Of a stretch of 64,000 bases of DNA, positions 11,401-60,411 are shown in pieces (the first letter of the stretch is position 1; the number at the start of each line of letters is the position of its first letter). Origin of the DNA: Octopus sinensis (lineage: Eukaryota); the NCBI RefSeq assembly GCF_006345805.1, contig NC_043012.1, positions 32,860,001 through 32,924,000 on the forward strand. Reading direction: 5' to 3'. Made by a program: the position numbers and the translations under genes. Under the pieces are notes generated by a model. The model made no database searches. It was not told the origin of the DNA and saw only the letters and a list, made by a program, of their open reading frames with translations.

Positions 11401-14400
11401 TACAATCGTTTTTTTTGTACTGATTATTTTTTAATTTATTTGTCTTCCATTTTTGGTGATTGTTTTTTTTTTTTCTTTGTCATTATAAATATTAAAAACT
11501 TTTCGTTGCTAAAATTCTTCATTTTACAATGACTATTCAACTTTATCTAATAAGCAGTAAGTGACTAAGTTTTAAAACAAATATTGACTGCTGTTCTAAT
11601 TTTTTTTAATCTGTATCACTTAGATTTTGATTGTACCTTTAGACCTATTTGGGGCTTGTCATATCAATTCTGATTCATTTTAAAAGCAACTTCCAAATTG
11701 CTTGCATGCCCAGTCTGAGGATATATCAATTTGAACAGAAAAAGTGTAATATTTTCATTGTGGCTTCTCTAAAACAGAAATGTGGTTACTAAGTCATTTT
11801 TAATCAATATTTGTTAGTGTATATTTGATACCATTCATCTAAAACCACCTTTCTCTCTTTTCCTAGAAATCAAGGGTTTGCAAACCCCCCTCCTGTGAAC
11901 CAACCGGCATTTGTCACCCCACCTCCTCCACCACCCCCATCTCATAGTCCATCCCCAGAGAGGTCTGAAGTAGATAAGCACTTGATGCCTCCTCCTCCAC
12001 CTCCCGGTGAGAGTTTTGTTGGTTTTATGAAGCCAAAAAAAAAAGCCAAAGAAAATTGTTAACTACTATATGAATAAATAACAACAAACTGTGTGAGGGA
12101 CGCAAAGGGTGTAGCAGTTTGATAGCTTAGGTGCTGTTTGTAATCCTTCTTCTTGGTACATCTCTAACGTCTAAGTCTAGCAAATCTATTCTACATTCAC
12201 ACCTGCACGTGCACACACAATACACACTTGCAGTCATAAAACTTTTGATATCCACAGAAAACGACAGCCTCATAAGCCAAACTTATTTTTAGGCTGCATG
12301 GACCCTTTAACATTATACAAAAAAATTCCAACTTGTGATCTTAAACTATCACCTTCATCATCATTTTAGCATCCACTTTTCCATGCTTGCTTGGGTTAGA
12401 CAGAATTTGTTGAGGTGGATTTTCTATGGCTGGATGCACTTCCTGCCACCAACCTTCATCTGTTTCTAAGCAACGTAACATTTCCCATTGCCTAATGTAT
12501 TTTCGAAGGAAGATTTGAAATAAACGCTGATTGTTTACAACTATCATCTGATTTCAAAACAAAAGGAGCCTTTGTAATGAATATTAATTTGCACATTCAA
12601 TCTAAATTGGATGTATTGTTTAAAACACCTTAGAGTGTAGTAAACATCACAAGAAATCACCTTGTGTGCATGACAAACTGCTAAGAAGTACAGACTAATA
12701 TATTAGCTAATGAAATTTTTATTAGCACAGGCAAATGTGGATCATCAGTAATAGCTAACCAAGTGCCAAATGCCGGACTAACTGATGATATAGCATGATA
12801 CTGGCCAAACAGCCAGTGATGTTGCAAGTGGCTATTGGACTTTTTGGTCCAAAGAAATTGTATCTTAAATTGTAAGAGGGTCATTACCTCGGTACATGTA
12901 TTTTTTATAAAAAAAAACAATGTTTTTGAGAAGCAGAGGGTCTGTGGGCGCCTTCTTGCCTTCTCCCATCTTTATATTTTTTATTATAATCATCCGCCTC
13001 ATTAATGTCTATGTCCAGCCCGCAAGCTACTCTTTGTAATGCCCTTATGGCAAATCTTTATGAAATAAAGTAGCTATTGGACTGTGAATAAATTAGCTGG
13101 TAGTGACAGAAATAGCTTTTGTAATGACTATTAATTAGCACATCCAACCTAAATTGGATTATGTTGTTTAGAATGCCTAAGACTGTAGTAAGCATTTTGA
13201 GAAATCATCTCATGTAGATGACAAATACTAAAAAGGCTGCTTCTGTCTCTAATAGTTCATTCATTCACAGCCCACCAGCTTTTTGCAGTGTCACTGGTTG
13301 TTTGGTCACTATTATGCTAAATCATCCTGTCTGGCTAGCTGCTACTGATGATCCGTAGTTTACAAGGAAATCACGTAATGTTGTAGTGTCATCCACCAGT
13401 GCTGATTAAAATTTCATCACCCACTATAGCAGTCTGTGCTTTTTAGCATTTGTCATGGACACAGGATGATTTCTTGAGACATTAAGTTGTTCTAAACAAT
13501 ACATCTAATATCAATATATATATATATGATATAGTGTATATTTAAACACATAAGGAATTCACTTATAGGGATTCTACATGCTAGAAAGAACAGCTAGGTT
13601 CTATAACCACAAAAATTAGGGATAAAATTCAGTTTTTGTGGTTATAGAACCTAGCTGTTCTTTCTAGCATGTAGAATCCCTATAAGTGAATTCCGTATGT
13701 GTTTAAATATACACTATATCGTATGACTAATATATAGTCTTTTTGACTAATTTTTTTACACGTTAGACCACTGGAAATGTAAATTTTGATTAATTTCCAT
13801 TTCCCTTTGATATGATTATATATTGATATGTGCGAATGCATGAAACTCTCAGACCTTGAATCACACTAATACTTCTGCTAAATATTAATAAAAAATATCA
13901 TCATTTAACGCCTACTCTTCATTCTGGCATCTGTTAGACAGTTTGACTGGAGCTGATAAGCCAGAGAACTGCACCAGGTTTCAGTCTGATCTGACATGGT
14001 TTCTGCAGCTGGATGCCCATACATACATACATATGCATGCACACACACACACACTTTCTCTCTCAATATCACAATCATTATCGACCTAACTCCATTCACC
14101 ATATTTTACATTACATTTATACTTATATACTTGTATGCTTATACCTAAAATCATCTCCTCCGTATTAGCCACTACTCCCTTAATTTCCCATTCCCTGTTA
14201 CTCCCTTTCTGGCTTTTGGTTTTTAATATTGAGTAATGACAACGATGGGGAGGGTTGTAACTGAAATTTATTAAACATTCTGTCCGTGTTATCTTAGCTA
14301 ACTGTATAATGTTTTTGGCCTTCTACACAAATGAGATAATAGATTAGAAAAATTAGAAAGTGGTGAATGTTTCAAAACAGATTATATATATGTATATGTA

Positions 14401-17136
14401 TGTATGTGTGTATGTATATATATATGTTTGTGTGTGTGTATATATATATATCCATATATATGGATGTGTGTGTATATGCATATACATGCATACACACACA
14501 CATATATCCGTACATACATATATATGTATGTACGCGTGTGTGTGTATGCATGTATATGTACGTATGTATATGCATATATATTTATATATTACATATACAT
14601 ATATATGTGCATATGTATAATATATGCATATATATATATATGTGTGTGTGTGCATATACATATATGTGTGTGTGTGTGTTATATATGTATATTATATGCA
14701 TATATATGTGCATGAATGTGTGTATGTATATATATGTGTATGTATATATATATATACATATATATAATATGGGTGTCATTGTTTATACATACATATATAT
14801 TTATACATCTGTATATTTCTGTATCTATATACTTTAAATTAATAATTTTCTTTGTGCTTTTATTTTCATGCAAATTACGTAATCTGAAATTCTAGTGATT
14901 TTTGTATTGGATATGTAATATTTTAATTCTAAACTTACTATTCTAATCCTTACTTTGAGATTTATATATATGTATGTATACACATATATATGCATCTCAA
15001 AGTATCAGAATCTTCTTTGTAATTTTCTTCATTCATTTCATTAAGCTGATAATTCATCTATTATTTCTCTGGCATTCTCTACATAATTGTTTAATATGAA
15101 GATATCCAAACTTCTGTTAGTGATTAATTTTTTCACAAATAATTATTGTAACTTTTCAGGAAGCAAACGTACGGCGCAGCATCAAGGAGGTACTGAGACA
15201 CAGGAACAACGTAAAAAAATCAAAGGCGCTCTTGGCAGTGTAGCCGGTAATATTTTTTATAATTACAGTTTGTTTATTAGATCCAAAGCTAGGTGACTAA
15301 AATGTAAAATTACCTGTAGGAAAGTTTTAAATGTAAAGACTTTTATGAAGCATTGTGTTGCTAACTTCTGCTTCTATATTACAGTTGAATGTGAGAGAGA
15401 TTAATTGACATAAAATAGTTGTTTCAGCAATTCCTACAGTATAACCCATGTGTAAAAGGGTAAAAGAAATAATATTTCATTTTTGTAATTGGTTTGCAAG
15501 ATTCATGTGTGGAAACGGACTCTGTTGTGTCTTACGAGAGTCATTATACCAATATTAATAACACACACACACACTGCTTCGATTCCACTCCGTTATTATT
15601 AGTCAGTTGGTTAAGTATCAATCCAACTAAACAAGCGCTTGTTTGACTTGTCAGTTAAACAGTTAGTTGTTTGCTTTGATTTTTATTCATCAAAATTCTT
15701 TCATTTCCACTTTTCTCTATTTGTTTTCATTCTCTGAAATTCTAAGCTAAAATGTTACAAAATCAAAATATGGCTTCTTAAATTATTGGTATATGAAGCC
15801 TCAGTGAGGGGATTTTACAGTAAGGAGGGCCTGTCGTAGATGAGGTCGTAAAGATTTTTGCAAACATAACTGATTGATTGATTAACTGAATGATTAATCA
15901 AACCATTGATTAGTTTCTTAGTTAAATAGTTATCCAAATAACAAATAATAAAGAAGTGAAATTGAACCAGTGTGTGTATTTATTATTGATGTAATGACCC
16001 TCCCAAGATGCACAAGTTGACATTAGGGACCTTGCAAACCAAATACAAAAACAAAATATATATCTGTTCCCTTAAATGGTATACTTGTATTCAGCAGATA
16101 CATATTCGTTTGTCATGCTGTCTCCTCATCTTAGTTACATAATAAATGTTTTTTCATACACAAATAGCTGTTAGGCTTATTCAGTTTTAGTTCTTATAGA
16201 TTTTTTCATTAACTTTTACCCTTTGAAAAGATTTTTCAGTAAGTTTTTAAAATTCCCATTTTCTAAATCTTTTCTGCCGTATGTTGATTTGGAAAATACT
16301 GTGAATATAGTTGGATTGATGTAATCAAGATTAGGCTAAGAAAGTTTATGATTCATAAAAGACAAGAGAATTTCGTAGAACTTTGTCAGTATGAAATAGT
16401 TGAGGATTATCTTGTCCACCTTTGCCTTAAACTTGTTTGTATTTTATTTATATTGACAGTATATGGATCTGATGATGAAGAAGATGATTCTAGTTCTCCA
16501 AGTCGACAACAACAGCAACAGAGGACTGTCCCTTACAGCCAGTCAAGTTCTACAAATGCTGCCTATGTTCACCAAGGGCAGCCCAGTCCCCCACCTCCAT
16601 CTTTGCCTGCCAACCATTATGATCAATACTTGCCAGGGCAAGTATCAACATCATCCCAACAGCAACAGCCATTGCAGCATGGACAGTATTCTCCTCCGGA
16701 CCCTAACAATGGAACACCTTATCAACCATGCTCTAGTCCAACAAACTTTGCTAGTAAACAGTCCACAACACAACCACAACAGAACAACCATAGGAACTCA
16801 TATGAACAAATTTTGTCTACACAAGCTTCTCAGTTTGGTGTACCGCGACCACTCAGCCAGTCAACTTTTGCTACATCTACAACTGGGTTGCAAACATCTC
16901 CAGCCTATATCCCTCAGCAACAACCACAGCAACAACAACAGCAGCAGCAACAGCAACCCCAACCCCCTCAATTTAATGGACACACTTCAGCTGTCGCTGC
17001 TAATCAAGGCTACCTTCAACAGTTTGCTAACCAACCACCCCCTTCACAGCAGTTTTCAGGACAACCAAGCAACCAAGCTCCTCCATTCCAACCACCTCCA
17101 CCACCTGGCATGTCTTATTGGATGTCTCCTGCCTGA
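2311..17136 (+). CDS. KHDC4: KH homology domain-containing protein 4 (BLOM7/KIAA0907) orthologue, 3' ten coding exons; 5' end lies upstream of the window
   Basis: Exons 2311-2418, 3781-3921, 6299-6418, 7099-7200, 7500-7732, 8966-9229, 10880-11025, 11867-12006, 15160-15246 and 16460-17136 all have AG/GT boundaries and compatible phases (2018 nt, one frame to TGA). Motifs recalled from human KHDC4 occur in the same order: PPKRRFTEE..ENLLGYQ|HGP, DKHLMPPP, VAVYGSDDEEDD and terminal MSYWMSPA* (human, from memory: KRRFTEE..GLLGYQHGP, DRQLMPPP, LVAYAADSSDEEEE, MPFWMAP). Confidence 0.9.
2620..2880 (-). mobile_element. SINE-like element with CAT/GAT-repeat tail (family D), degenerate
   Basis: catcatttaacatccattttccatgctggcatgggtt start is shared with copies at 9650, 27075 and 54170, and in reverse at 5150 and 26100. 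Confidence 0.7.
3523..3577 (-). ncRNA. Minimal type-I hammerhead-ribozyme-like motif (Penelope type), variant core
   Basis: Minus strand reads GTCT CCGATGA A GGGAT..ATCCT A GAAA CAGCTG TA AGAC: stem I GTCT/AGAC, stem II, palindromic stem III CAGCTG and a GUA triplet. The core is CCGAUGA rather than CUGAUGA. Confidence 0.5.
3781..3921 (+). CDS. KHDC4: KHDC4 exon (141 nt, phase 1-1): MQTVTSLPPTFQQVLPTSSVVLSANSLPASLTSMPPPTLVSQASAQ
   Basis: Acceptor ctttccttaatttctag at 3780; donor AAG|gtttga at 3922; same P/S/T/Q composition as neighbouring exons; not reported in this frame by the ORF track. Confidence 0.72.
5150..5460 (+). mobile_element. Family D SINE-like element
   Basis: gtgctggtggcacgtaaaa repeats, ttaggaagggcatcc core, ends ccatgctagcatggaaagcggacgttaaacgatggtgatgatg. 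Confidence 0.8.
6299..6418 (+). CDS. KHDC4: KHDC4 exon (120 nt, phase 1-1): MASSANAGGLVIPVSYSTSLTPMPMVTSLSTSPLLSVGA
   Basis: Acceptor ttctctgtgcag at 6298; donor CTG|gtaagc at 6419; open frame. Confidence 0.78.
7099..7200 (+). CDS. KHDC4: KHDC4 exon (102 nt, phase 1-1): PPPAAPAGQMDASGSLLPNASLPPPLLQVSTAP
   Basis: Acceptor tgttttag at 7098; donor CTG|gtatga at 7201; GC-rich island in an AT-rich intron. Confidence 0.78.
7500..7732 (+). CDS. KHDC4: KHDC4 exon (233 nt, phase 1-0): NANLGNPQPAQVIVGQQ...PPPPYYGQ
   Basis: Acceptor ctcattgttag at 7499; donor CAG|gtgagt at 7733; lies within ORF 7415-7774. Confidence 0.85.
7948..8358 (-). mobile_element. tRNA-derived SINE (family A) with internal CA/TA microsatellite
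   Basis: Reverse complement of the consensus seen at 35289-35730. Confidence 0.75.
8966..9229 (+). CDS. KHDC4: KHDC4 exon (264 nt, phase 0-0) with the conserved PPKRRFTEE..LLGYQ motif
   Basis: Acceptor ttctgtttcag at 8965; donor CAG|gtttgt at 9230; motif matches KHDC4. Confidence 0.9.
10065..10275 (+). mobile_element. tRNA-derived SINE (family B), degenerate
   Basis: gcctttcatcctcttggggtcaataaaatacataccag core is shared with the 51571 and 57798 copies. Confidence 0.65.
10880..11025 (+). CDS. KHDC4: KHDC4 exon (146 nt, phase 0-2): HGPPQLANMIASGPPPP...VYEEFR
   Basis: Acceptor tgttgttag at 10879; donor CAG|gtaact at 11026; begins with HGP, continuing the LLGYQ|HGP junction. Confidence 0.82.
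11867..12006 (+). CDS. KHDC4: KHDC4 exon (140 nt, phase 2-1): NQGFANPPP...EVDKHLMPPPPPP
   Basis: Acceptor ttctctcttttcctag at 11866; donor CCG|gtgaga at 12007; DKHLMPPP resembles human DRQLMPPP. Confidence 0.85.
13528..13720. repeat. Near-perfect 88-bp-arm inverted repeat (1 mismatch, 17-nt loop) in a KHDC4 intron
   Basis: 13528-13615 is the reverse complement of 13633-13720 except taagg versus tacgg. Confidence 0.92.
14370..14830. repeat. Compound TA/TG/CA microsatellite
   Basis: Directly visible; source of several spurious Y/I/C/V-rich ORFs. Confidence 0.95.
15160..15246 (+). CDS. KHDC4: KHDC4 exon (87 nt, phase 1-1): SKRTAQHQGGTETQEQRKKIKGALGSVA
   Basis: Acceptor acttttcag at 15159; donor CCG|gtaata at 15247; RKKIK basic patch resembles a nuclear localisation signal. 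Confidence 0.82.
16460..17136 (+). CDS. KHDC4: KHDC4 terminal coding exon: YGSDDEEDD, Q/P/S-rich tract with polyQ, MSYWMSPA*
   Basis: Acceptor tattgacag at 16459; within ORF 16348-17136; TGA at 17134-17136; acidic motif and C-terminal WMxP motif typical of KHDC4. Confidence 0.88.
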
Positions 17137-22259: not shown

Positions 22260-25200
22260 TTTCAGCCTCGCCTCGTGTTATATATTATGTATAATTCATT
22301 AGTTCTTCTCAAATATATTGTTGTCTCTCTCATGTCCTGTGTTAAATATATATATAATCCTATACATCGGCCCCCTAATTTTATCGATTAGCCCCACTGG
22401 CGCTCACACATGGCTGCTAGTTTTCGCAGGGGCACCCGCCCTCCCACCCCCTCCACCGTTACAGGAAGTCCTAAATTTTCTCATGTACACTTCAAAGTCT
22501 TACGCCGCCCCCACCGCTACAGGAAGTCCTAAATTTTCTCATCCTTGTTGTCTCCCATGTACACTTCAAAGTCTTACGCCACCCCCACCTCCTTCCATAA
22601 AAGGTAGTGGTCATTCATTGCAAGATATGTTTAGTGTAGCGTACGCGGTTTGAACTTGAGTTTTATTGTTTGTCTATGAATCCTGTCAAACACGAGTTTT
22701 CTTTTCAGGTTCATGATGCTACTAGGGCCAATACCTCCCACTCCCTCAGGGTTGGCACCCTCAACGTTGGCACACTGAAAGGCAGATCTGGAGAGATCGT
22801 TGAATTGCTTGAACGGAGGTGTGTTGATATATGCTGTATTCAAGAAGTGAGGTGGAGAGGAGGTTCTGCTAGGTTCCTCACAGGTAAAGGACAGAGGTAC
22901 AAGATTTTCTGGGCTGGGAATACTGACGGGGTCGGGGGTGTGGGTATACTTATGGCCGAAAAATGGGTAGATAAGGTAATCGAGGTAGTCAGAGTATGTG
23001 ACAGAATACTGAAGATTAGATTAGTGCTCCATCATAGTTTAGCAACTATTATATCGGTCTATGCCCCTCAGCCAGGGCTACCCGATGGACAGAAAGACCG
23101 TTTCTATGACACCCTACTGCAGACCACCTCATTGATGAATGACAGGGACCTTCTCTTTGTGGTTGGTGACTTCAATGGGCATGTTGGACGATATGCTGGG
23201 GGCTTCCATGGAGGCTATGGTTATGGTTCCCGCAACGAGGAGGGAACCAGGCTGCTGGAGTTCTGTGATGCGAATAGTCTTATGGTTTGCAACACTAACT
23301 TCAGGAAACCGACAAGCCACTTGGTCACCTACCGATCGGGCCGGCATACTGGCCAAATCGACTACATCCTTGCCAGAAAAAGGGAAAGATGGCTGCTTAT
23401 AAATGCCAAAACCTTCCCAGGCGAAGAATGTACCCCACAACATAGACTGGTAGTTAGTGACTTTAGGATCAGGACTAAGAGGACGACTAGAAGTCGACCA
23501 ACATGGAGAAGAAGGGTCTGGAAGCTTAAAGACCCTGCAAATGGACAGATTCAGAGACATGTTACTTGAAGCCTTTGATGAAATAGAAGGGGGTATAGCT
23601 ACACATGGGGTAGAAGATAACTGGACGCTTCTAAGGGACAACCTGCTGAAAGCCGCTGACCAGATCTGTGGCTAGTGCAAAGTCCCCTCAAGACCCAAAA
23701 TAACGTGGTGGTGGAACAATATTGTTGACAGGGCTATTAGACAAAAGAAACAGGCTTGGAAGCAGGGAAGTGTATCAGACTGCCAGAAGGGAAGCTAGGA
23801 GGCAGGTGTATTTAGCCAGAGGGGAAGCAGATAAGAAAAAATTTGCCAATGTTCTGCGCCGTGAGGATGAAAGACTTGAGGTATTTCGTGTTACAAGACA
23901 GTGTGTGAGAGAGAATCGTGATGTGGTAGGAGAGAAATGTGTTCGCAAGGATGACGGTTCACTTGCGCTAAATGAGGATGCAAAGAGAGAGGTTTGGAGA
24001 CGCCACTATGAAAGGTTGCTGAATGAGGAAAATGAATGGGATAAAGAGAGTCTGCCGAATGTCGACCCAACAGAGGGACCAGCAATCCGAGTTGACAGTT
24101 CCTTAGTAGTTAAGGCAATTACAAGCATGAAAACAAGGAAAGCCCCTGGCCCATCAGGAATTACTGCAGAGATGCTCAAAATATCTGGTAGTGCTGGCTA
24201 TAGCCTAGTCACCCATATAGTTAACCAGGTGATACACGAAGGAGTCATACCCAATTACTGGTGTAGCAGCATAATAGTCAACTGCTACAAAGGTAAAGGT
24301 GACGCTCTAGATACAAATTACTGGGGTATCAAACTGCTGGATCAGGTAATGAAGGTCACGGAGAGGGTTATAGCCCAACTAATTAGAGAGAGAGTTAGCT
24401 TAGATGAGATGCAGTTTGGGTTCATGCCAGGGAAAAGTACAACTGATGCTATATTCCTGGTAAGGCAGCTGCAGGAGAAATATCTAGCCAAAGATAAGCC
24501 CCTGTACCTGGCTTTTGTTGATATGGAGAAAGCCTTCGACAGGGTCCCCCGATCCCTTATCTGGTGGTCAATGAGGAAACTAGGGATAGATGAATGGTTA
24601 GTGAGAGCTGTGCGAGCCATGTACAGAGACGCTGCTAGTAAGGTGAGGGTTGGCAACGAGTACAGTGAAGAATTCCGGGTAGAGGTTGGGGTCCACCAAG
24701 GTTCAGTCCTCAGTCTCCTCCTATTTATCATAGTCCTCCAGGCAATAACGGAGGAATTCAAGACAGGATGCCCCTGGGAGCTCCTCTATGTTGATGACCT
24801 TGCTCTAATTGCTGAGTCACTATCAGAACTGGAGGAGAAGTTTCAGGTGTGGAAACAAGGATTAGAATCGAAGGGCCTTAGAATCAACCTAGCCAAAACC
24901 AAAGTCCTAATAAGTAGGAAGGTAGACCAATCACAAACGACTTCAGGTAGATGGCCCTGCTCGATTTGCAAAAAAGGCGTAGGTAGAAACTCTATAAGGT
25001 GCACCAAGTGTAAGCTATGGACACATAAGAGGTGTAGCAATGTCAAAGGAAGGCTAACTAGGAAAATAGTTTTTATCTGTGGCAGATGCTCAGGAGTAAT
25101 AAACACTGAAAATGTGAAGAGACCAACTTCTACCACGTTCCAGGGAGAAAAACTAGAAGTAGTTGATAGCTTCCGCTACCTAGGTGACCAAGTCAGTAGC

Positions 25201-25850
25201 GAGGGTGGGTGTGCTGAAAGTGTAACTGCTAGAGTAAGAATAGCCTGGGCAAAGTTTAGAGAGCTCTTACCCCTGCTGGTGACAAAAGGCCTCTCGCTCA
25301 GAGTAAAAGGCAGACTGTATGATGCATGTGTACGTACAGCCATGTTACATGGCAGTGAAACATGGACTGTGACTGCTGAGGATATGCATAAGCTCGCAAG
25401 AAATGAAGCCAGTATGCTCCGATGGATGTGTAATGTCAGTGTTCATACTCGACAGAGTGTAAGTACCTTGAGAGAAAAGTTGGACCTAAGAAGCATCAGT
25501 TGTGGTGTGCAAGAGAGACGTTTGCGCTGGGATGGTCATGTGGCGAGAATGGATGAAGATAGTTGTATGAAAAAGTGCCACACCCTAGCAGTTGAGGGAA
25601 CCTGTGGAAGAGGTAGACCCAGGAAAACCTGGGACGAGGTGGTGAAGCACGACCTTCGAACTTTAGGTCTCACCAAGGAAATGACTAGAGACCGAGACCT
25701 ATGAAAGTATGCTGTGCGTGAGAAGACCCGGCAAGACTAGTGAGAACATAACCTGTGGCCTACATACCTTTCCTTCTTGGGACACAAAACTCCACTTGTG
25801 AAGACCCGTTGAGGCAAGTGAAAATCAAAATCAAACCAAATCAAATCCAA
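22260..25850 (+). mobile_element. Near full-length RTE-clade LINE (APE endonuclease + RT + PHD-type finger), disabled
   Basis: ATG at 22676; APE motifs LRVGTLNVGT, ICCIQE, VGDFNGHVG and QIDYIL; RT motifs QFGFMPGKST, FVDMEKAFD, GVHQGSVLS and LYVDD. Lesions: frameshift near 23547, TAG at 23673-23675, frameshifting deletion near 23762, and TGA at 25702-25704 ahead of the likely original TAG at 25738-25740. AAAATC-like repeats near 25820-25850. 5' boundary approximate. Confidence 0.92.
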
Positions 25851-25889: not shown

Positions 25890-26254
25890 AATGGAAATTG
25901 CAGCTGTGGTACCAGTGCCGTGACAAGTAAGCGAACCATCCGATCGTGGCCATTGCCAGCGCCGCCCTGACTGGCCTCCGTGCCGGTGGCACATAAAAGC
26001 ACCATCCGTTCGTGTCCGTTGCCAACCTCGCCTGGCCCCTGTGCCGGTGGCACATAGCACCATCCATTTGTGGCCGTTGCCAGCCTCGCCTGGCCCCCGT
26101 GCCGGTGACACGTAAAAAGCACCCACTACACTCACGGAGTGGTTGGCATTAGGAAGGGCATCCAACTGTAGAAACACTGCCAGATCAGACTGGGCCTGAT
26201 GCAGCCTTCTGGCTTCACAGACCAACCCATGCTAGCATGGAAAGCGGACGCTAA

Positions 26255-43149: not shown

Positions 43150-46100
43150 TCAACACGTTTTCTCTTTCATTAGTTGCAAAGTTTTTGGTTGCTTAATCCA
43201 GTGGATAAGTTCTGCAATACTGACAATATAAACATCAGACATGTTAACCAATTTAGAGATAAAGTTTTTCAAACCTTCCAAGTTGTGCTTCTGTGAGGGA
43301 TTGAACCAGTCGTGTCGCAGATGGACTCCAAAGGGAATTTTCTTTTGGTAATGAACTGCTAAATTTTTCAGAAGAAATTCCAGAGTATCTTTTGTAGTAC
43401 TTGGATTAAATAAACAGCCGTCAGCAAAGACGCAAGTGTAATTATATTTGTCTAATAGTGGTATTACTGGAACTTCCCAAAATCCGTAAAAATTGCCAGT
43501 TGGACATTTCCCAATGAGACATTCTCTTCCCCAGCCAAAATCAAGAGTGAAAGGCCACCTATAATAACTTTGTTTGTAAATCAACGTCGAATCATAAATA
43601 AAATGCTCTTTTTGCAAAATCTTCATTTGATCATTGCCCAAAGGAAATATACTTGGAGAACGCCAACCAGTTATATTAACAGCTGGGATACCAGCACCAC
43701 GAGTCATTTTAAACTTTTGACTTTGAATATCTAAAGCTAACATACTTTTGTTTGAGTAGAACGAAGTACTATTTCCCTGAAGACCAATATCCATATCAGC
43801 TTCGTATAATTTTCTGACGAGGTCATAACGAGTGCCTGCATCCGAAACAAAGTAAGTAGCTTTTATGGGACATCTGAGGTTTAGATGCGATAGATTAAAC
43901 AAAGAGATCATACTGTAAAAGAATTGATTAGTAATGGGTCCGTTGAAAGTGAAATACACAAACTGAGGAATATCGTCCATCTTAGCTATACCTACATTAG
44001 TATTCATGCAACGACAATAAGGCAATAAGCAATTATTTCCCTGCTGGCATGTCTTAAACGTATTGTTATTCATATGTTTGCTTTTAATGGATATTCTCTT
44101 TGAATATCTAGAGCTAAATTCCTGATTTCCAACACCAGCTCTAGCCTGGAAGTTACTTTTAAATGGTTGACCAGTTTCGTTAGCAATAACTGATGTTTTC
44201 CATACATCATCAGCTTGCTCAGATGCTTTTAGTACCTTCTTGTCTAAAGCAAAGCTTGTATTCCTTCTTATATATGGTGAGTTGATATCGATGTTGTTGT
44301 TTCCACTGCTGTTGTTATTAATACTTCGACTAGTCATTAAAGAACCCAAGCTAGATGATTGGTTAACTGTTAAGATGTTTAAACGGTTTCTTTTTGCGTT
44401 ATTGTATCTCATTAGGTTGTTCTGGGACGTTCGTCCTTGCAAATGTCTTGTTGGTGTATTATTTTGAGGAATTTTAAAGAAAATTTCTGATTTATCCATT
44501 GATACGACTGTTCCATTCTTGTACATACCTAGTTTTTCTTGGAAATCTTTTGGTTGGTTAATGTGATATCTTGGGAAATAACTTCCAGAATATAGTCTAG
44601 AATGGTCAACATTTTTTGTTTGTTGTTTCTGATTATATATTTTCTTTTTCTTGTTTTCTTTGCCATTTTGCAGGGAGGCCTCGGTATTCATCTGTTTTAA
44701 GTGTTCTTTGTCTACTGATTCTTTGATGTAGCTAGAAAATTGAGATTGGTCATTCTGATTCCAGCCATTAGTTAAGTTAAAATTTCTAGCAACCCACTCA
44801 CGGTTCTTCGTCGTAACATGTTCAGTTACTGGCATTGATTTCTTTCTTGATTCTGCCCCGGTGTTAAGAGACTTTATTTCTTCTTTTGCTCTTCTTTCTT
44901 TATAATCTGTTAGCTTGTTTCGAGACATCCATAAGTTGTCGGAAATTGAATCACTTGCGATATTATATGAGAACTTATCACTGTCTTCTAATACTGATAT
45001 ATTATATAATCGATTTTCCTTCGCAATATATCTCTCCTCCAAATGTGGCTTGAATTGCTTTTGTAATAGCCTCTCCTTTTTGTGAATATCATTATATTTG
45101 TACTGCGGCAAGAAATTTTTGATAAAGTCATTCGAAGAATCGCATTGCCAAGATTTCAATGAATTAATCTCAGAGTTTTTAACAGGATTTTTAACCCATT
45201 CCAGCATTTGCTTGATCGTGATGATGTGAACATCTGGTTTTTTCAAAAGTTCTCGAATAAATCGATCCATTGCTTTCAAACGGTATGGATCATCGGGGTA
45301 ATTATAGAAAAACCAAGCTGCATGCATATGTACACCCATTGGAGCCCTATTACCATTGTAATAGTCCAAAAAATTGTTCCATAAATATCTATAAGCTTCT
45401 TCGTAGGTCGTCGGTGGAAAAGTACAACCATCAGTGTATACACAGTCATAGAGTGTGTTTTTATCTGTCACAGACACCACAGGTACCTCCCAAAAGCCAG
45501 GATGTTGCATCTGAGGACAGTTTGGGATTTGACAACGAAATGGCCAGCCATAATCCAGCGTGAAGGGATATATTGCTTTTCTCTGTCTTTTAGAATAAGT
45601 TAGAGTCGCATCATAAATATACCCACCTTCTTTGAGGATTTCAACCTGTTTGTCTCCGAAAGGTTTAAGGAAAGGACTTCTCCACCCGATAATCTCGTCT
45701 TTAGGAACATTTCCGAAACGCACCAAGTTGTCTTTTTGTCCAAGTATTTCCTTTCTAACTTGAACAAGATTTATATCACTTCTGTGGTTTACACTATGAG
45801 AAGCTATTTCCATTCCTTGTTTATAAAATTCATTCACGAGGCGATAGTCCGTGTAATTGTGAGAAACAAATAGAGTGAACTTGATTCGACATCCATTCGG
45901 ATTCTTCCTCTCGGCCGAAAACAATTTCCTGTACATTTTCGTTGTTTGAAGGGTTACGGCGTCGTCGAATGTGAAGTAAACAATTTGGGGGAAATCTGTT
46001 ATATTTGCTCCATTCGTAGGTAGAGAATCTTTACAACAGACGCATTTTGGTGGGTAACAAGTGGAGTTCTGTTGACATACCCGACATACTCTCAGCGTAC

Positions 46101-46164
46101 TGGTTTTAATTATTATGATATACACGAGGAAAATATGAAGACTAATTCGCAAATATATGTACAT
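43150..46164 (-). CDS. Secreted chitin deacetylase-like protein (1004 aa, single coding exon) with two CE4/NodB polysaccharide deacetylase domains joined by a low-complexity linker of about 360 aa
   Basis: Uninterrupted 3015-nt ORF; aaaccATG context; hydrophobic N-terminus. Domain 1 (aa 30-341) has CxxxxxCxxPxCxC, TFDD (45961-45972), HSVNH (45784-45798), RSPFL and PMGVHMHAAWF, matching animal CDA motifs 1, 2, 3 and 5. Domain 2 (aa 706-1000) has the same scaffold with degenerate motifs. Confidence 0.9.
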   Translation of the reverse strand: MYIYLRISLHIFLVYIIIIKTSTLRVCRVCQQNSTCYPPKCVCCKDSLPTNGANITDFPQIVYFTFDDAVTLQTTKMYRKLFSAERKNPNGCRIKFTLFVSHNYTDYRLVNEFYKQGMEIASHSVNHRSDINLVQVRKEILGQKDNLVRFGNVPKDEIIGWRSPFLKPFGDKQVEILKEGGYIYDATLTYSKRQRKAIYPFTLDYGWPFRCQIPNCPQMQHPGFWEVPVVSVTDKNTLYDCVYTDGCTFPPTTYEEAYRYLWNNFLDYYNGNRAPMGVHMHAAWFFYNYPDDPYRLKAMDRFIRELLKKPDVHIITIKQMLEWVKNPVKNSEINSLKSWQCDSSNDFIKNFLPQYKYNDIHKKERLLQKQFKPHLEERYIAKENRLYNISVLEDSDKFSYNIASDSISDNLWMSRNKLTDYKERRAKEEIKSLNTGAESRKKSMPVTEHVTTKNREWVARNFNLTNGWNQNDQSQFSSYIKESVDKEHLKQMNTEASLQNGKENKKKKIYNQKQQTKNVDHSRLYSGSYFPRYHINQPKDFQEKLGMYKNGTVVSMDKSEIFFKIPQNNTPTRHLQGRTSQNNLMRYNNAKRNRLNILTVNQSSSLGSLMTSRSINNNSSGNNNIDINSPYIRRNTSFALDKKVLKASEQADDVWKTSVIANETGQPFKSNFQARAGVGNQEFSSRYSKRISIKSKHMNNNTFKTCQQGNNCLLPYCRCMNTNVGIAKMDDIPQFVYFTFNGPITNQFFYSMISLFNLSHLNLRCPIKATYFVSDAGTRYDLVRKLYEADMDIGLQGNSTSFYSNKSMLALDIQSQKFKMTRGAGIPAVNITGWRSPSIFPLGNDQMKILQKEHFIYDSTLIYKQSYYRWPFTLDFGWGRECLIGKCPTGNFYGFWEVPVIPLLDKYNYTCVFADGCLFNPSTTKDTLEFLLKNLAVHYQKKIPFGVHLRHDWFNPSQKHNLEGLKNFISKLVNMSDVYIVSIAELIHWIKQPKTLQLMKEKTC

Positions 46165-46228: not shown

Positions 46229-46262
46229 GCTTATATTTAATTCCTCTGAATTAAATATAAGC
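46229..46262. repeat. Perfect 15-bp-arm hairpin about 65 nt upstream of the deacetylase ATG
   Basis: gcttatatttaattc ctct gaattaaatataagc. Confidence 0.9.
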
Positions 46263-59671: not shown

Positions 59672-59708
<37 letters not shown>

Positions 59709-60344
59709 CATATATATATATATATATACATATGTATACACATATGTACATATATATACATACATATATACATGTACATATACATACACACATATATAGA
59801 TATATTTCTGTGTGAGTTAGAGGTTGAGAAACCAACTAAGGGATAGTACCTATCCAATATACTTCTGGTAGTGTACCCAATTTTTCATACCCAAGTGCTA
59901 GTTATATATATATATATATATATACATATGTATACACATATGTACATATATATACATACATATATATATAATATACATACATATATACATGTACATATAC
60001 ATACACACATATATAGATATATTTCTGTGTGAGTTAGAGGTTGAGAAACCAACTAAGGGATAGTACCTATCCAATATACTTCTGGTAGTGTACCCAATTT
60101 TTCATACCCAAGTGCTAGTTATATATATATATACATACATATATATATATAATATACATATGTATACACATATGTACATATATATATACATACATATATA
60201 CATGTACATATACATACACACATATATAGATATATTTCTGTGTGAGTTAGAGGTTGAGAAACCAACTAAGGGATAGTACCTATCCAATATACTTCTGGTA
60301 GTGTACCCAATTTTTCATACCCAAGTGCTAGTTATATATATATA

Positions 60345-60350
<6 letters not shown>
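59390..60350. repeat. Minisatellite: four near-identical units of about 210-230 bp, each a constant core of about 100 bp plus a variable TA/CA spacer
   Basis: Core tatttctgtgtgagttagaggttgagaaaccaactaagggatagtacctatcc..cccaagtgctagt starts near 59573, 59803, 60020 and 60233. Confidence 0.95.

Positions 60351-60411
<61 letters not shown>

What the first reader, a model, noticed from the sequence alone, without database searches (positions are those of the whole stretch)
43150..46164. Tandem active plus pseudo-enzyme chitin deacetylase in one secreted polypeptide
Domain 1 keeps TFDD (catalytic base and metal Asp), HSVNH (two metal His), RSPFL and VHMH. Domain 2 has TFNG (43939-43950), LQGNST in place of HSxxH, RSPSI and VHLR, so the Asp-His-His triad and catalytic base are gone while the scaffold and cysteines remain. 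The linker (aa 342-705) is rich in N/S/K/Q with several dibasic sites (ERRAK, SRKKS, AKRNR, IRRN, SKRI). Hypothesis: the dead domain is a chitin/chitosan-binding or scaffolding module replacing the CBM14 domain of insect CDAs, possibly released by convertases, for hard chitinous tissue such as beak or radula.
Basis: partly seen in the sequence, partly recalled or inferred. Interest (0 to 1): 0.8.

Follow-up and report, generated by a model that had tools for sequence, protein, structure and literature searches.

The report
Chitin deacetylase with dead twin domain
An octopus gene encodes a secreted chitin-modifying enzyme tied by a long floppy linker to a catalytically dead copy of itself; the pairing is ancient and conserved across molluscs, so the dead copy very likely has a non-enzymatic job such as gripping chitin, but that job has never been tested.

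Summary
Window 43150-46164 (-) is one uninterrupted 1004-aa ORF: a leader peptide, an intact CE4 chitin deacetylase domain (D1), a 361-aa disordered basic N/S/K-rich linker, and a second CDA-fold domain (D2). D2 has lost the Asp-His-His metal triad and the catalytic base.

The arrangement is not specific to octopus or cephalopods. Seventy-two bivalve, gastropod and octopus proteins share it. All of their dead C-terminal domains form one clade (200/200 bootstraps) with conserved Gly replacements at the former metal site.

D2 is under purifying selection: dN/dS is 0.11 in Haliotis, 0.13 in Saccostrea and 0.39 in Octopus, against 0.06-0.10 for D1. A confident model of D2 superposes on silkworm CDA8 at TM 0.88.

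The convertase-release idea has no support. Dibasic sites occur at the frequency expected by chance, and there is no furin-type site. The beak/radula assignment cannot be tested here; the only proteomic lead places a 2xNodB CDA in abalone shell matrix.

The proteins are already in public databases, mostly labelled "uncharacterized", and I found no paper that analyses the dead domain.

Verdict: a real, conserved active-plus-pseudoenzyme CDA. It is a new variant of a known kind. A chitin/chitosan-binding role for D2 is the best inference but is unproven.

The parts
43150..46164 (-). Complete single-exon CDS (1004 codons plus TGA stop at 43150-43152) of a tandem chitin deacetylase / pseudo-deacetylase
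   Evidence: ORF; the protein is identical to database entry P0122; the O. bimaculoides orthologue is also one uninterrupted ORF; so are the oyster and abalone genes.
46093..46164 (-). N-terminal leader, aa 1-24 (MYIYLRISLHIFLVYIIIIKTSTL), a probable signal peptide
   Evidence: Maximum 10-aa Kyte-Doolittle hydropathy is 2.88. 56 of 59 full-length orthologues have a similar leader before D1. AF2 models a helix at aa 2-22. The Haliotis 2xNodB CDA is annotated with a secretion signal. No dedicated signal-peptide predictor was available.
45142..46092 (-). D1, aa 25-341: catalytically complete CE4/NodB chitin deacetylase domain
   Evidence: 5ZNS E 2.6e-55 and 5Z34 E 1.5e-51. PF01522 hit. All five motifs are intact. 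dN/dS is 0.095. High pLDDT in the full-length model.
45961..45972 (-). D1 motif 1, TFDD (catalytic base D67, metal ligand D68)
   Evidence: Asp at both positions in 71/72 N-terminal domains. Motif roles from PMC6463723.
45784..45798 (-). D1 motif 2, HSVNH (metal ligands H123 and H127)
   Evidence: 72/72 for both His.
45667..45681 (-). D1 motif 3, RSPFL (R162)
45427..45441 (-). D1 motif 4, VYTDG, which aligns to BmCDA1 AMVDS
   Evidence: Alignment, motif definition, census.
45322..45333 (-). D1 motif 5, VHMH (catalytic acid H281)
   Evidence: 72/72 His.
44059..45141 (-). Linker, aa 342-702: disordered, basic (net +24), N/S/K-rich, with 10 N-glycosylation sequons
   Evidence: Composition and shuffle test. 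pLDDT <50 across aa 343-703. No Pfam family. dN/dS 0.43. Linkers in other molluscs are 56-1033 aa and not alignable.
43153..44058 (-). D2, aa 703-1004: CDA-fold pseudoenzyme domain that ends on the last conserved Cys
   Evidence: 5Z34 E 1.2e-43. AF2 pLDDT 85.5, pTM 0.86. Foldseek TM 0.88 to 5Z34. Invisible to Pfam. dN/dS 0.39. Falls in the C-domain clade at 100% bootstrap.
43939..43950 (-). D2 ex-motif 1, TFNG (base Asp replaced by Asn, metal Asp replaced by Gly)
   Evidence: Gly at the metal-Asp position in 68/72 C-terminal domains, none with Asp. The base Asp is kept in 56/72, but octopus has Asn.
43765..43782 (-). D2 ex-motif 2, LQGNST (both metal His lost; now contains an N-x-T sequon)
   Evidence: first His in 3/72, second His absent from the commonest residues; Gly replaces the motif Ser in 67/72.
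43648..43662 (-). D2 motif 3, RSPSI (Arg and Pro retained)
   Evidence: R 65/72, P 62/72.
43417..43431 (-). D2 motif 4, VFADG (Asp retained)
   Evidence: Asp 72/72.
43312..43326 (-). D2 ex-motif 5, VHLR-H (R950 aligns with the catalytic His; H951 is one residue later)
   Evidence: His at the catalytic column in only 9/72 C-terminal domains.

Best explanation
SHOWN: the locus is an intron-less octopus gene for a leader-bearing, presumably secreted two-domain protein. D1 is a canonical zinc-type CE4 chitin deacetylase with every catalytic residue intact and under strong constraint. D2 is a full-length copy of the same insect-type CDA fold with its five disulfide-forming Cys pairs, but it cannot carry out the canonical metal-dependent deacetylation. 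The metal Asp is Gly, both metal His are gone, and in octopus the base Asp is Asn. The two domains are joined by about 360 residues of disordered, basic, sequon-rich linker. The D1-linker-D2 layout arose once, before bivalves, gastropods and cephalopods split, and D2 has been kept under purifying selection ever since. INFERRED: D2 works as a built-in non-catalytic carbohydrate module, a CDA-derived 'lectin'. It recognises chitin or partly deacetylated chitin and anchors or positions the enzyme in a chitinous extracellular matrix, while the flexible linker lets D1 reach neighbouring chains. This would supply the substrate-targeting role that CBM14 domains or accessory chitin-binding proteins supply for insect CDAs. 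In shelled molluscs that matrix is most likely the shell organic framework. In octopus the target tissue is unknown, and D2 appears to be under weaker constraint.
For: Architecture and loss of catalytic residues. Fold retention: D2 AF2 model with pLDDT 85.5 and pTM 0.86; TM 0.88 to BmCDA8 and 0.86-0.87 to BmCDA1. All 10 D2 Cys align to conserved D1 Cys. Conservation: 72 tandem proteins share the same pattern. The replacements are themselves conserved (Gly 68/72 at the metal Asp, Gly 67/72 at the motif-2 Ser). The pocket residues motif-3 Arg (65/72) and Pro (62/72), motif-4 Asp (72/72) and the base Asp/Glu (63/72) are retained, as expected for a pocket that still contacts a sugar. Single origin: the C-domain clade is recovered in 200/200 bootstraps. 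Selection: D2 dN/dS is 0.107 in Haliotis, 0.130 in Saccostrea and 0.388 (CI 0.20-0.84) in Octopus. No other binding module is present: only PF01522 is found, with no CBM14. D2 is always at the extreme C-terminus; 55 of 71 proteins end on its last Cys. The linker is disordered. [quoted passage not shown] A 2xNodB CDA is physically present in abalone nacre and prismatic matrix (PMC6003135).
Against: There is no direct evidence that D2 binds chitin or chitosan. The aromatic 'claw' residues that shape the BmCDA8 cleft are not conserved in the D2 clade, nor in D1. D2 also ends before the C-terminal loop residues (Phe347, Tyr361) that close one end of the BmCDA8 cleft. I could not map conservation onto the model surface. 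Activity of D1 is predicted only, and insect CDAs with complete motifs can be inactive in vitro. I obtained no expression or proteomic data for the octopus gene. The octopus D2 is more relaxed than its shelled-mollusc counterparts, so its function there may be reduced. The NJ tree could be affected by long-branch attraction, although the shared Gly signatures argue independently for a single origin.
Confidence: 0.55

Rival explanations
1. D2 is an intramolecular regulatory or activating partner of D1, the classic pseudoenzyme-enzyme pairing. It docks onto D1 to complete or gate the substrate cleft, rather than binding the polymer on its own.
For: BmCDA1 needs an accessory protein to become active, and the two domains of PgaB together form the binding cleft. 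D1 and D2 have been co-inherited in one polypeptide across molluscs. D2 is under strong constraint in shelled species.
Against: The linker varies from 56 to 1033 residues and is disordered, which does not suggest a fixed D1-D2 interface. The full-length AF2 model gives pTM 0.44, so no confident inter-domain arrangement. Stand-alone dead CDA-like proteins exist in scallops and Argonauta, which shows that such domains can function without a fused active partner.
Confidence: 0.2
2. The protein is a precursor. Proprotein convertases cut the linker at dibasic sites and release D1 and D2 as separate matrix components.
For: Eleven dibasic pairs occur in the linker, most of them conserved in O. bimaculoides. 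The protein is secreted and the linker is accessible and disordered.
Against: The number of dibasic pairs equals the chance expectation for this K/R-rich composition (10.1 +/- 2.6, p = 0.43). There is no R-x-[KR]-R or RxxR site. Conservation of the sites is uninformative because the linker is 89% identical overall. Many orthologues have T/P/S mucin-like linkers with 0-3 dibasic pairs, so cleavage cannot be a family-wide mechanism.
Confidence: 0.1
3. In octopus specifically, D2 is a relic losing its function after loss of the shell. It is still an open frame but drifting, and only D1 matters.
For: D2 dN/dS is 0.39 in Octopus against 0.11-0.13 in Haliotis and Saccostrea, while D1 stays at 0.06-0.10. 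Octopus has additionally lost the base Asp that 56/72 D2 domains keep. The most divergent D2 domains belong to sea slugs with reduced shells, and octopus lies in the lower fifth.
Against: The upper confidence limit of omega is 0.84, below 1. The frame is intact over 302 codons in at least three octopus species or assemblies. The octopus D2 keeps 89% of the 65 clade-conserved positions and all 10 cysteines. The AF2 model is confident.
Confidence: 0.1
4. D2 is not dead but neofunctionalised: an enzyme using metal-independent chemistry on this fold, acting on some other substrate.
For: The same fold supports metal-independent catalysis in PuuE allantoinase. PuuE (3CL6) appears among the Foldseek hits (TM ~0.59) and is noted as a close structural relative of 5Z34. 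D2 keeps a conserved Asp/Arg/Asp constellation in most species, and the Gly replacements are conserved rather than random.
Against: The positions that would have to supply new catalytic groups (ex-motif 2, ex-motif 5) are highly variable across the clade: R/K/N/M/Q/Y at the first His column and R/K/S/H/Q/T at the catalytic His column. Octopus has even lost the base Asp. The D2 profile has no significant sequence match to PuuE-type proteins in the PDB.
Confidence: 0.05

Closest known systems
Insect chitin deacetylases BmCDA8 (group V, PDB 5Z34) and BmCDA1 (group I, PDB 5ZNS/5ZNT), CE4 family
   Same: Both D1 and D2 share the insect-type CDA fold: a (beta/alpha)7 NodB barrel with the loop insertion and C-terminal extension. 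D1 has the same five motifs and the same Asp-His-His zinc triad. The proteins are secreted.
   Different: Insect CDAs have one CDA domain, often with CBM14 and/or LDLa modules. This protein has no CBM14 or LDLa and instead carries a second, catalytically disabled CDA domain after a ~360-aa disordered linker. D2 also stops at the conserved Cys, before the BmCDA8 residues Phe347 and Tyr361.
Stand-alone CE4 pseudoenzymes: Bacillus Ba0150 (4M1B), BA3943 (7BKF/6HM9) and Encephalitozoon cuniculi EcCDA (2VYO)
   Same: All have a NodB fold with the metal-binding and/or catalytic residues lost, and are regarded as inactive.
   Different: They are single-domain microbial proteins only distantly related in structure (TM 0.45-0.5, 9-13% identity). 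D2 is an animal, insect-type CDA domain fused in cis to an active paralogue, and it has been conserved as a clade across a phylum.
E. coli PgaB (N-terminal CE4 deacetylase plus C-terminal non-catalytic glycoside-hydrolase-like domain)
   Same: A deacetylase domain is fused to a catalytically inactive, enzyme-derived carbohydrate-binding domain that helps present the polymer (as summarised in PMC6463723). This is the mechanism I propose here.
   Different: The accessory domain of PgaB has a different (GH18/GH20-like) fold, is tightly apposed to the deacetylase domain, and acts on PNAG. Here the accessory domain is a duplicate of the deacetylase itself, held on a long disordered tether.
Molluscan shell-matrix 'chitin deacetylase' entries (Haliotis laevigata idb_6290 'NodB (2x)'; Lottia gigantea Lotgi1|181237; Hyriopsis cumingii CDA isoforms A/B)
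   Same: They belong to the same protein family, and the Haliotis entry has the same two-NodB layout with a secretion signal and was recovered from nacre and prismatic layers. The Hyriopsis isoforms appear among the single-domain relatives (P0094, P0100).
   Different: Those reports list the proteins in tables without noting that the second domain is catalytically dead, ancient and under selection. The octopus has no external shell.
Chitinase-like lectins (GH18 chi-lectins) and tandem active/inactive domain pairs such as receptor tyrosine phosphatase D1/D2 (from general knowledge, not tested here)
   Same: The concept is the same: an enzyme fold that has lost its catalytic residues while keeping a ligand-binding or regulatory role, sometimes fused to its active twin.
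   Different: These are unrelated folds and chemistries, so the analogy is functional only.

Membership tests
CE4 / NodB chitin deacetylase (catalytically competent) - D1 | Motif 1 TFDD: catalytic base Asp plus metal-binding Asp | tested here: met
   TFDD at aa 65-68. Asp at both positions in 71/72 N-terminal domains. Definition from PMC6463723.
CE4 / NodB chitin deacetylase (catalytically competent) - D1 | Motif 2 H(S/T)xxH: two metal-binding His | tested here: met
   HSVNH at aa 123-127; 72/72 for both His.
CE4 / NodB chitin deacetylase (catalytically competent) - D1 | Motif 3 RxP(Y/F) Arg and motif 5 catalytic His | tested here: met
   RSPFL with R162; VHMH with H281.
CE4 / NodB chitin deacetylase (catalytically competent) - D1 | NodB (beta/alpha)7 barrel of the insect CDA type | tested here: met
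   Full-length alignment to 5ZNS (E 2.6e-55) and 5Z34. PF01522 above the gathering score. High pLDDT over aa 26-342.
CE4 / NodB chitin deacetylase (catalytically competent) - D1 | Measured de-N-acetylation of chitin or chito-oligomers | not testable with these tools
   Needs recombinant protein. Note that BmCDA1, with complete motifs, is inactive without an accessory protein.
CE4 / NodB chitin deacetylase (catalytically competent) - D2 | NodB barrel of the insect CDA type | tested here: met
   5Z34 E 1.2e-43. AF2 pLDDT 85.5, pTM 0.86. Foldseek TM 0.88, E 4.8e-26.
CE4 / NodB chitin deacetylase (catalytically competent) - D2 | Asp-His-His metal triad | tested here: not met
   G742, Q796 and T800 occupy the three positions. 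Across 72 C-terminal domains: no Asp at the metal-Asp column, His in 3/72 at the first His column, and His absent from the seven commonest residues listed for the second.
CE4 / NodB chitin deacetylase (catalytically competent) - D2 | Catalytic base Asp (motif 1) and catalytic acid His (motif 5) | tested here: not met
   The base position is N741. R950 aligns with the catalytic His. H951 at +1 can be aligned to it only by opening a gap. Only 9/72 C-terminal domains have His at that column.
CE4 / NodB chitin deacetylase (catalytically competent) - D2 | Motif 3 Arg/Pro and motif 4 Asp lining the pocket | tested here: met
   RSPSI and VFADG. R 65/72, P 62/72, D 72/72.
Pseudoenzyme (CE4-derived) - D2 | Clear homology and fold identity with an active enzyme family, with loss of residues essential for the canonical mechanism | tested here: met
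Pseudoenzyme (CE4-derived) - D2 | Maintained by selection (not a decaying pseudogene segment) | tested here: met
   dN/dS 0.107 and 0.130 in Haliotis and Saccostrea and 0.388 (CI 0.20-0.84) in Octopus. 50 columns are at least 90% conserved across the clade.
Pseudoenzyme (CE4-derived) - D2 | Experimentally shown lack of catalytic activity | not testable with these tools
   Needs a recombinant D2 assay.
Insect-style CDA groups I-IV (CDA domain plus CBM14/ChtBD2, with or without LDLa) | Presence of a CBM14 (PF01607) chitin-binding domain | tested here: not met
   Only PF01522 is found in the whole protein, and nothing in the linker or D2. In one search, PF01607 was listed only for the bee protein P0118 and for none of the named mollusc hits. 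In the D2-profile search it was listed for Hydra P0157.
Proprotein-convertase-processed precursor | Furin/PC consensus sites (R-x-[KR]-R or RxxR), or dibasic sites enriched over chance and conserved across orthologues | tested here: not met
   No consensus sites. 11 dibasic pairs against 10.1 +/- 2.6 expected. Many orthologous linkers have 0-3.

The most novel reading that the evidence does not exclude
The D2 clade is an unrecognised, phylum-wide family of CDA-derived chitin/chitosan-recognition domains ('CDA-lectins'), analogous to GH18 chi-lectins. Tethered to an active deacetylase, it reads or templates the acetylation pattern of the chitin framework during molluscan matrix and shell formation. 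Its constraint relaxes when the shell is lost, as in octopus and sea slugs.
Probability: 0.3. Interest if true: 0.65.

Novelty: new variant of a known kind. Interest (0 to 1): 0.45.

Why it matters
Chitin is the organic scaffold of mollusc shells, radulae, beaks and pens, and its degree and pattern of deacetylation control stiffness, protein binding and mineral nucleation. Almost nothing is known about how molluscan deacetylases are targeted to it. This analysis shows that molluscs have carried an active CDA fused to a catalytically dead CDA twin since before their classes diverged, with strong purifying selection on the dead half. That identifies a concrete candidate for the missing substrate-recognition module. 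It also explains why database annotation undercounts the domain, since Pfam sees only D1. Finally, it gives a simple testable hypothesis: does D2 bind chitin or chitosan and direct D1? If D2 turns out to be a lectin specific for the acetylation state of chitin, it would also be a useful reagent for chitosan analytics. The practical importance of the octopus copy itself is modest until its tissue of expression is known.

Tried and rejected
1. Convertase processing. A shuffle test on the linker showed that dibasic sites occur at chance frequency and that there is no furin-type site, so I rejected them as positive evidence.

2. Cleft conservation. I mapped the BmCDA8 'claw' (Phe238/247/248) and the C-terminal aromatics onto D1 and D2. 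Octopus D2 has Tyr/Leu/Phe at the claw positions, but the columns are not conserved in either domain class, and D2 ends before Phe347 and Tyr361. This neither supports nor refutes binding.

3. D1-D2 packing. The full-length AF2 run gave pTM 0.44 with a disordered linker, so it is uninformative about domain contacts.

4. Pfam on D2 or the linker alone finds nothing. D2 is detectable only by direct comparison with CDA sequences and structures.

5. Expression. No transcript-derived contig carrying this exact protein is on record; the cluster members come from genome assemblies. A chitin deacetylase is the third most abundant transcript in Sepia haemocytes, but the supplement gives no accession, so it cannot be tied to this gene.

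6. Literature. Eight full-text searches found no paper analysing a dead second CDA domain in molluscs, only the 'NodB (2x)' table entry. Subscription-only papers are outside this library, so absence is not proof.

7. The bacterial-type promoter/terminator scan upstream of the ATG is irrelevant for an animal gene, and I disregarded it.

8. I considered whether the two domains could be an assembly or annotation fusion of two genes. I rejected this because the frame is continuous in the window and in O. bimaculoides, C. virginica, H. cracherodii, H. rubra and two Saccostrea species.


Full report
**1. What is in the sequence**

Window 43150-46164 on the minus strand is a single open reading frame of 1004 codons. 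At the window's ~36% GC about 7% of random codons are stops, so an open frame of this length has a chance probability of ~3e-32 (my arithmetic). Apart from the ORFs of a LINE retrotransposon, nothing else in the window exceeds 300 codons.

The protein is already in public databases. An entry identical over all 1004 residues exists (P0122). It is 97.8% identical to an Octopus vulgaris model annotated 'chitin deacetylase 7-like', and 93% identical to O. bimaculoides XP_014786111 'uncharacterized protein LOC106880611'. The window therefore comes from an Octopus vulgaris/sinensis-type genome. The window holds no second CDA copy.

**2. Anatomy**

- **Leader, aa 1-24.** This hydrophobic segment is modelled as a helix at aa 2-22. 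56 of 59 full-length orthologues have a similar leader immediately before the first domain.
- **D1, aa 25-341.** It aligns over its whole length to the crystal structures of Bombyx mori CDA1 (5ZNS, E 2.6e-55) and CDA8 (5Z34, E 1.5e-51), and it is the only part that Pfam recognises (PF01522). By the motif definitions of the BmCDA structure paper (PMC6463723), D1 has all five motifs: TFDD (base and metal Asp), HSVNH (two metal His), RSPFL, VYTDG and VHMH (catalytic His).
- **Linker, aa 342-702.** It has no Pfam match and pLDDT below 50 almost throughout in a full-length AlphaFold2 model. It is basic (net +24), rich in N, S and K, and carries 10 N-glycosylation sequons.
- **D2, aa 703-1004.** Pfam does not see it, but searched alone it matches 5Z34 at E 1.2e-43 across its full length. 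An AlphaFold2 model built on 24 C-terminal domains is confident (pLDDT 85.5, pTM 0.86). It superposes on BmCDA8 at TM 0.88 and on BmCDA1 at TM 0.86-0.87.
- **Catalytic positions in D2.** Motif 1 is TFNG, so both the base Asp and the metal Asp are lost. Motif 2 is QGNST, so both His are lost. Motif 3 is RSPSI, with Arg and Pro retained. Motif 4 is VFADG, with Asp retained. At motif 5 an Arg aligns with the catalytic His, and a His follows one residue later.
- **Cysteines.** All ten cysteines of D2 align with conserved cysteines of D1.

**3. It is a molluscan architecture, not an octopus one**

About 70 of the 120 best database hits carry two CDA-fold domains separated by a linker. They come from unionid mussels, ark shells, clams, zebra mussel, Mytilus, scallops, oysters, abalones, a limpet, a vent snail, periwinkle, whelk and sea slugs.

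In a census of 72 such proteins, the N-terminal domain has the base Asp and metal Asp in 71/72, and both metal His, the motif-3 Arg and the catalytic His in 72/72. The C-terminal domain differs sharply:
- It has Gly in place of the metal Asp in 68/72, and never Asp.
- It has His at the first metal-His column in only 3/72, and His is not among the commonest residues at the second.
- It has Gly in place of the motif-2 Ser in 67/72.
- It has the catalytic His in only 9/72.
- It keeps the base Asp or Glu in 63/72, the motif-3 Arg in 65/72 and the motif-4 Asp in 72/72.

A neighbour-joining tree of 199 domains recovers all 72 molluscan C-terminal domains, plus the fourth domain of a Mytilus four-domain protein, as one clade in 200 of 200 bootstraps. 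Together with the shared, conserved Gly replacements, this indicates that the domain died once, before bivalves, gastropods and cephalopods diverged. From established molluscan palaeontology that means the Cambrian or earlier.

D2 is always at the extreme C-terminus: 55 of 71 proteins end on its last Cys. An exhaustive profile search at 50% clustering finds about 40 representative clusters with two or more CDA-fold stretches. My motif classification of those representatives shows that all-active arrays, active-plus-dead pairs and doubly degenerate pairs all exist.

**4. Selection**

I calculated Nei-Gojobori dN/dS between the window and O. bimaculoides:
- D1: 0.095 (bootstrap CI 0.035-0.22)
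- Linker: 0.43
- D2: 0.39 (CI 0.20-0.84), at dS ~0.1

Because the genes have no introns, I could repeat the test in two independent congeneric pairs:
- Haliotis cracherodii vs H. rubra: D1 0.063, linker 0.35, D2 0.107 (CI 0.064-0.174)
- Saccostrea cucullata vs S. echinata: D1 0.060, linker 0.25, D2 0.130 (CI 0.080-0.195)

The dead domain is therefore under strong purifying selection in shelled molluscs and under weaker, but still non-neutral, constraint in octopus.

**5. The linker and the convertase idea**

The octopus linker has 11 overlapping dibasic pairs. Composition-preserving shuffles give 10.1 +/- 2.6 (p = 0.43), and there is no R-x-[KR]-R or RxxR site.

Linkers of the orthologues range from 56 to 1033 residues. 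They are either T/P/S-rich (mucin-like, up to 51% Thr) or Q/K/R-rich, they cannot be aligned, and many have 0-3 dibasic pairs. The linker behaves as a disordered, probably glycosylated tether. Proteolytic release is not excluded, but nothing in the sequence supports it.

**6. Mechanism**

*Shown:* D1 has everything a zinc-dependent CE4 deacetylase needs. D2 cannot bind the metal or perform the canonical acid-base chemistry, yet it keeps its fold, its disulfide framework and part of the pocket, and it is conserved.

*Inferred (about 0.55):* D2 is a built-in non-catalytic carbohydrate module that recognises chitin or partly deacetylated chitin and anchors the enzyme in a chitinous matrix, while the tether lets D1 sweep neighbouring chains. 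Four points support this reading:
- The protein has no CBM14 or any other binding domain.
- BmCDA1 is inactive until a chitin-binding accessory protein is added.
- PgaB needs a catalytically inert, enzyme-derived C-terminal domain.
- A 'chitin deacetylase ... NodB (2x)' protein with a secretion signal was recovered from abalone nacre and prismatic shell matrix (PMC6003135).

*Against:* There is no binding data. The BmCDA8 cleft aromatics are not conserved in the D2 clade. D2 ends before the C-terminal cleft residues of BmCDA8.

*Rivals:*
- An intramolecular activator of D1 (0.2). The highly variable disordered linker, and stand-alone dead CDA-like proteins in scallops and Argonauta, weaken this.
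- A convertase-processed precursor (0.1).
- A relic decaying in the shell-less octopus (0.1). In favour are the higher omega, the extra loss of the base Asp, and the observation that sea-slug D2 domains are the most degenerate. Against are the intact frames in several octopus species and 89% retention of clade-conserved positions.
- A neofunctionalised metal-independent enzyme, by analogy with PuuE allantoinase on the same fold (0.05). The would-be catalytic columns are highly variable.

**7. Comparison with what is known**

D1 passes every sequence and fold test for membership of the CE4 insect-type CDA family.

D2 passes the fold test but fails the metal-triad and base/acid tests. It should be filed as a CE4-derived pseudoenzyme domain, not as a deacetylase.

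Known CE4 pseudoenzymes (Ba0150, BA3943, E. cuniculi EcCDA) are stand-alone microbial proteins. A 2024 survey of NodB architectures covers bacteria, fungi and insects only. Eight full-text searches found no analysis of a dead second CDA domain in molluscs; the nearest is the 'NodB (2x)' table entry. Subscription-only literature was not searchable.

**8. Verdict**

The finding is real and the core interpretation (active plus pseudo-enzyme CDA in one secreted polypeptide) is right. Its scope needs correcting: it is a pan-molluscan, single-origin, selectively maintained architecture, not a cephalopod adaptation for beak or radula. The convertase element is unsupported. It is a new variant of a known kind, and the proteins themselves are already deposited, mostly as 'uncharacterized'. 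Interest is moderate (0.45). It yields a clear, inexpensive experimental question (does D2 bind chitin or chitosan and direct D1?) and a possible link between D2 constraint and possession of a shell.

Noticed in passing
window 22670-25704 (+): A non-LTR (LINE-type) retrotransposon. One ORF carries an endonuclease/exonuclease/phosphatase domain (22670-23569). A 660-aa ORF carries reverse transcriptase and a PHD-like zinc finger (23722-25704). This accounts for the local GC rise to 0.45-0.47. A 58-nt tandem repeat follows at 25935-26123.
   Followed up: partly
window 16348-17136 (+): A 262-aa ORF, extremely rich in Q, P and S with poly-Q runs and no Pfam match. It may be an exon of a low-complexity (transcription-factor-like) gene, or it may be a chance ORF.
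   Followed up: partly
window 59691-60381 and 14367-14837: AT/TG-rich simple-repeat arrays. One has a 213-nt period, 3.2 copies and 92% matches. The other has a 72-nt period and creates a spurious 156-aa 'ORF' made of C, Y, I, M and V.
   Followed up: no
window 46229-46262 (-), about 65-100 nt upstream of the ATG: A 15-bp perfect inverted repeat, GCTTATATTTAATTC-AGAG-GAATTAAATATAAGC, containing TATA-like sequence just upstream of the CDA start codon. It may be a core-promoter element or a chance feature of AT-rich DNA.
   Followed up: no
L001:10001-13003, L002:2001-5066, L003:2001-4415, L004:501-2888, L005:501-3368, L006:501-3419: The tandem CDA gene has a single uninterrupted coding exon in Octopus, Crassostrea virginica, two Haliotis species and two Saccostrea species. 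Intron-less coding sequences of 2.4-3 kb conserved across molluscan classes are unusual for animal genes and may point to an ancient retroposed origin.
   Followed up: partly
P0002/P0003 and cluster members P0124-P0130 (Mytilus spp., ~1406 aa): Mytilus has four-domain CDA proteins. Domain 1 is near-canonical (AFDD; HNTIH in P0002, HGAIP in P0003). Domain 2 is dead (AFDG/NGLGK). Domain 3 has lost the second His (AFDD/HGANN). Domain 4 is dead and belongs to the pan-molluscan D2 clade, while domains 1-3 form their own clade (100% bootstrap).
   Followed up: partly
P0093, P0103, P0109 (~1000 aa, ENA, organism unknown): An independent tandem duplication with the same outcome. The first domain is intact (SFDD/HSITH) and the second has lost the triad (GFIG/YSVTA). 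The two domains group together and away from the molluscan clades, which suggests convergent evolution of an active-plus-dead CDA pair in another taxon.
   Followed up: partly
P0142-P0151 (scallops), P0156 (Argonauta hians, 396 aa), P0183, P0184, P0191: Stand-alone or doubly degenerate CDA-like proteins. Scallops have a family with GFDG/SDAAN-type motifs. The octopod Argonauta has a single-domain protein with TFNG/NGLGK. Some representatives have both domains dead. Pseudo-CDAs appear to be common in molluscs.
   Followed up: partly
P0121 (Octopus vulgaris CAI9734152.1, 925 aa) compared with the window protein: The O. vulgaris gene model lacks the first 76 residues, i.e. the leader and the TFDD motif, although the window shows an intact upstream frame. 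This is probably an annotation truncation in that assembly.
   Followed up: partly
(Octopus, Haliotis, Saccostrea, sea slugs): D2 looks less constrained in shell-less or shell-reduced lineages. Omega is 0.39 in Octopus against 0.11-0.13 in abalone and oyster. The sea-slug D2 domains are the most divergent at clade-conserved positions. D1 constraint is uniform. This may link D2 function to the shell matrix.
   Followed up: partly
PMC7551771, supplementary table (Sepia officinalis haemocytes): A transcript annotated as chitin deacetylase is the third most abundant in cuttlefish haemocytes (~16,000 TPM). The paralogue is unknown. It hints that cephalopod CDAs may have roles outside hard tissues.
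   Followed up: partly
window 45270-45563 (+): A 97-aa ORF lies antisense to the CDA coding region. It has no support and is most likely a chance ORF.
   Followed up: no
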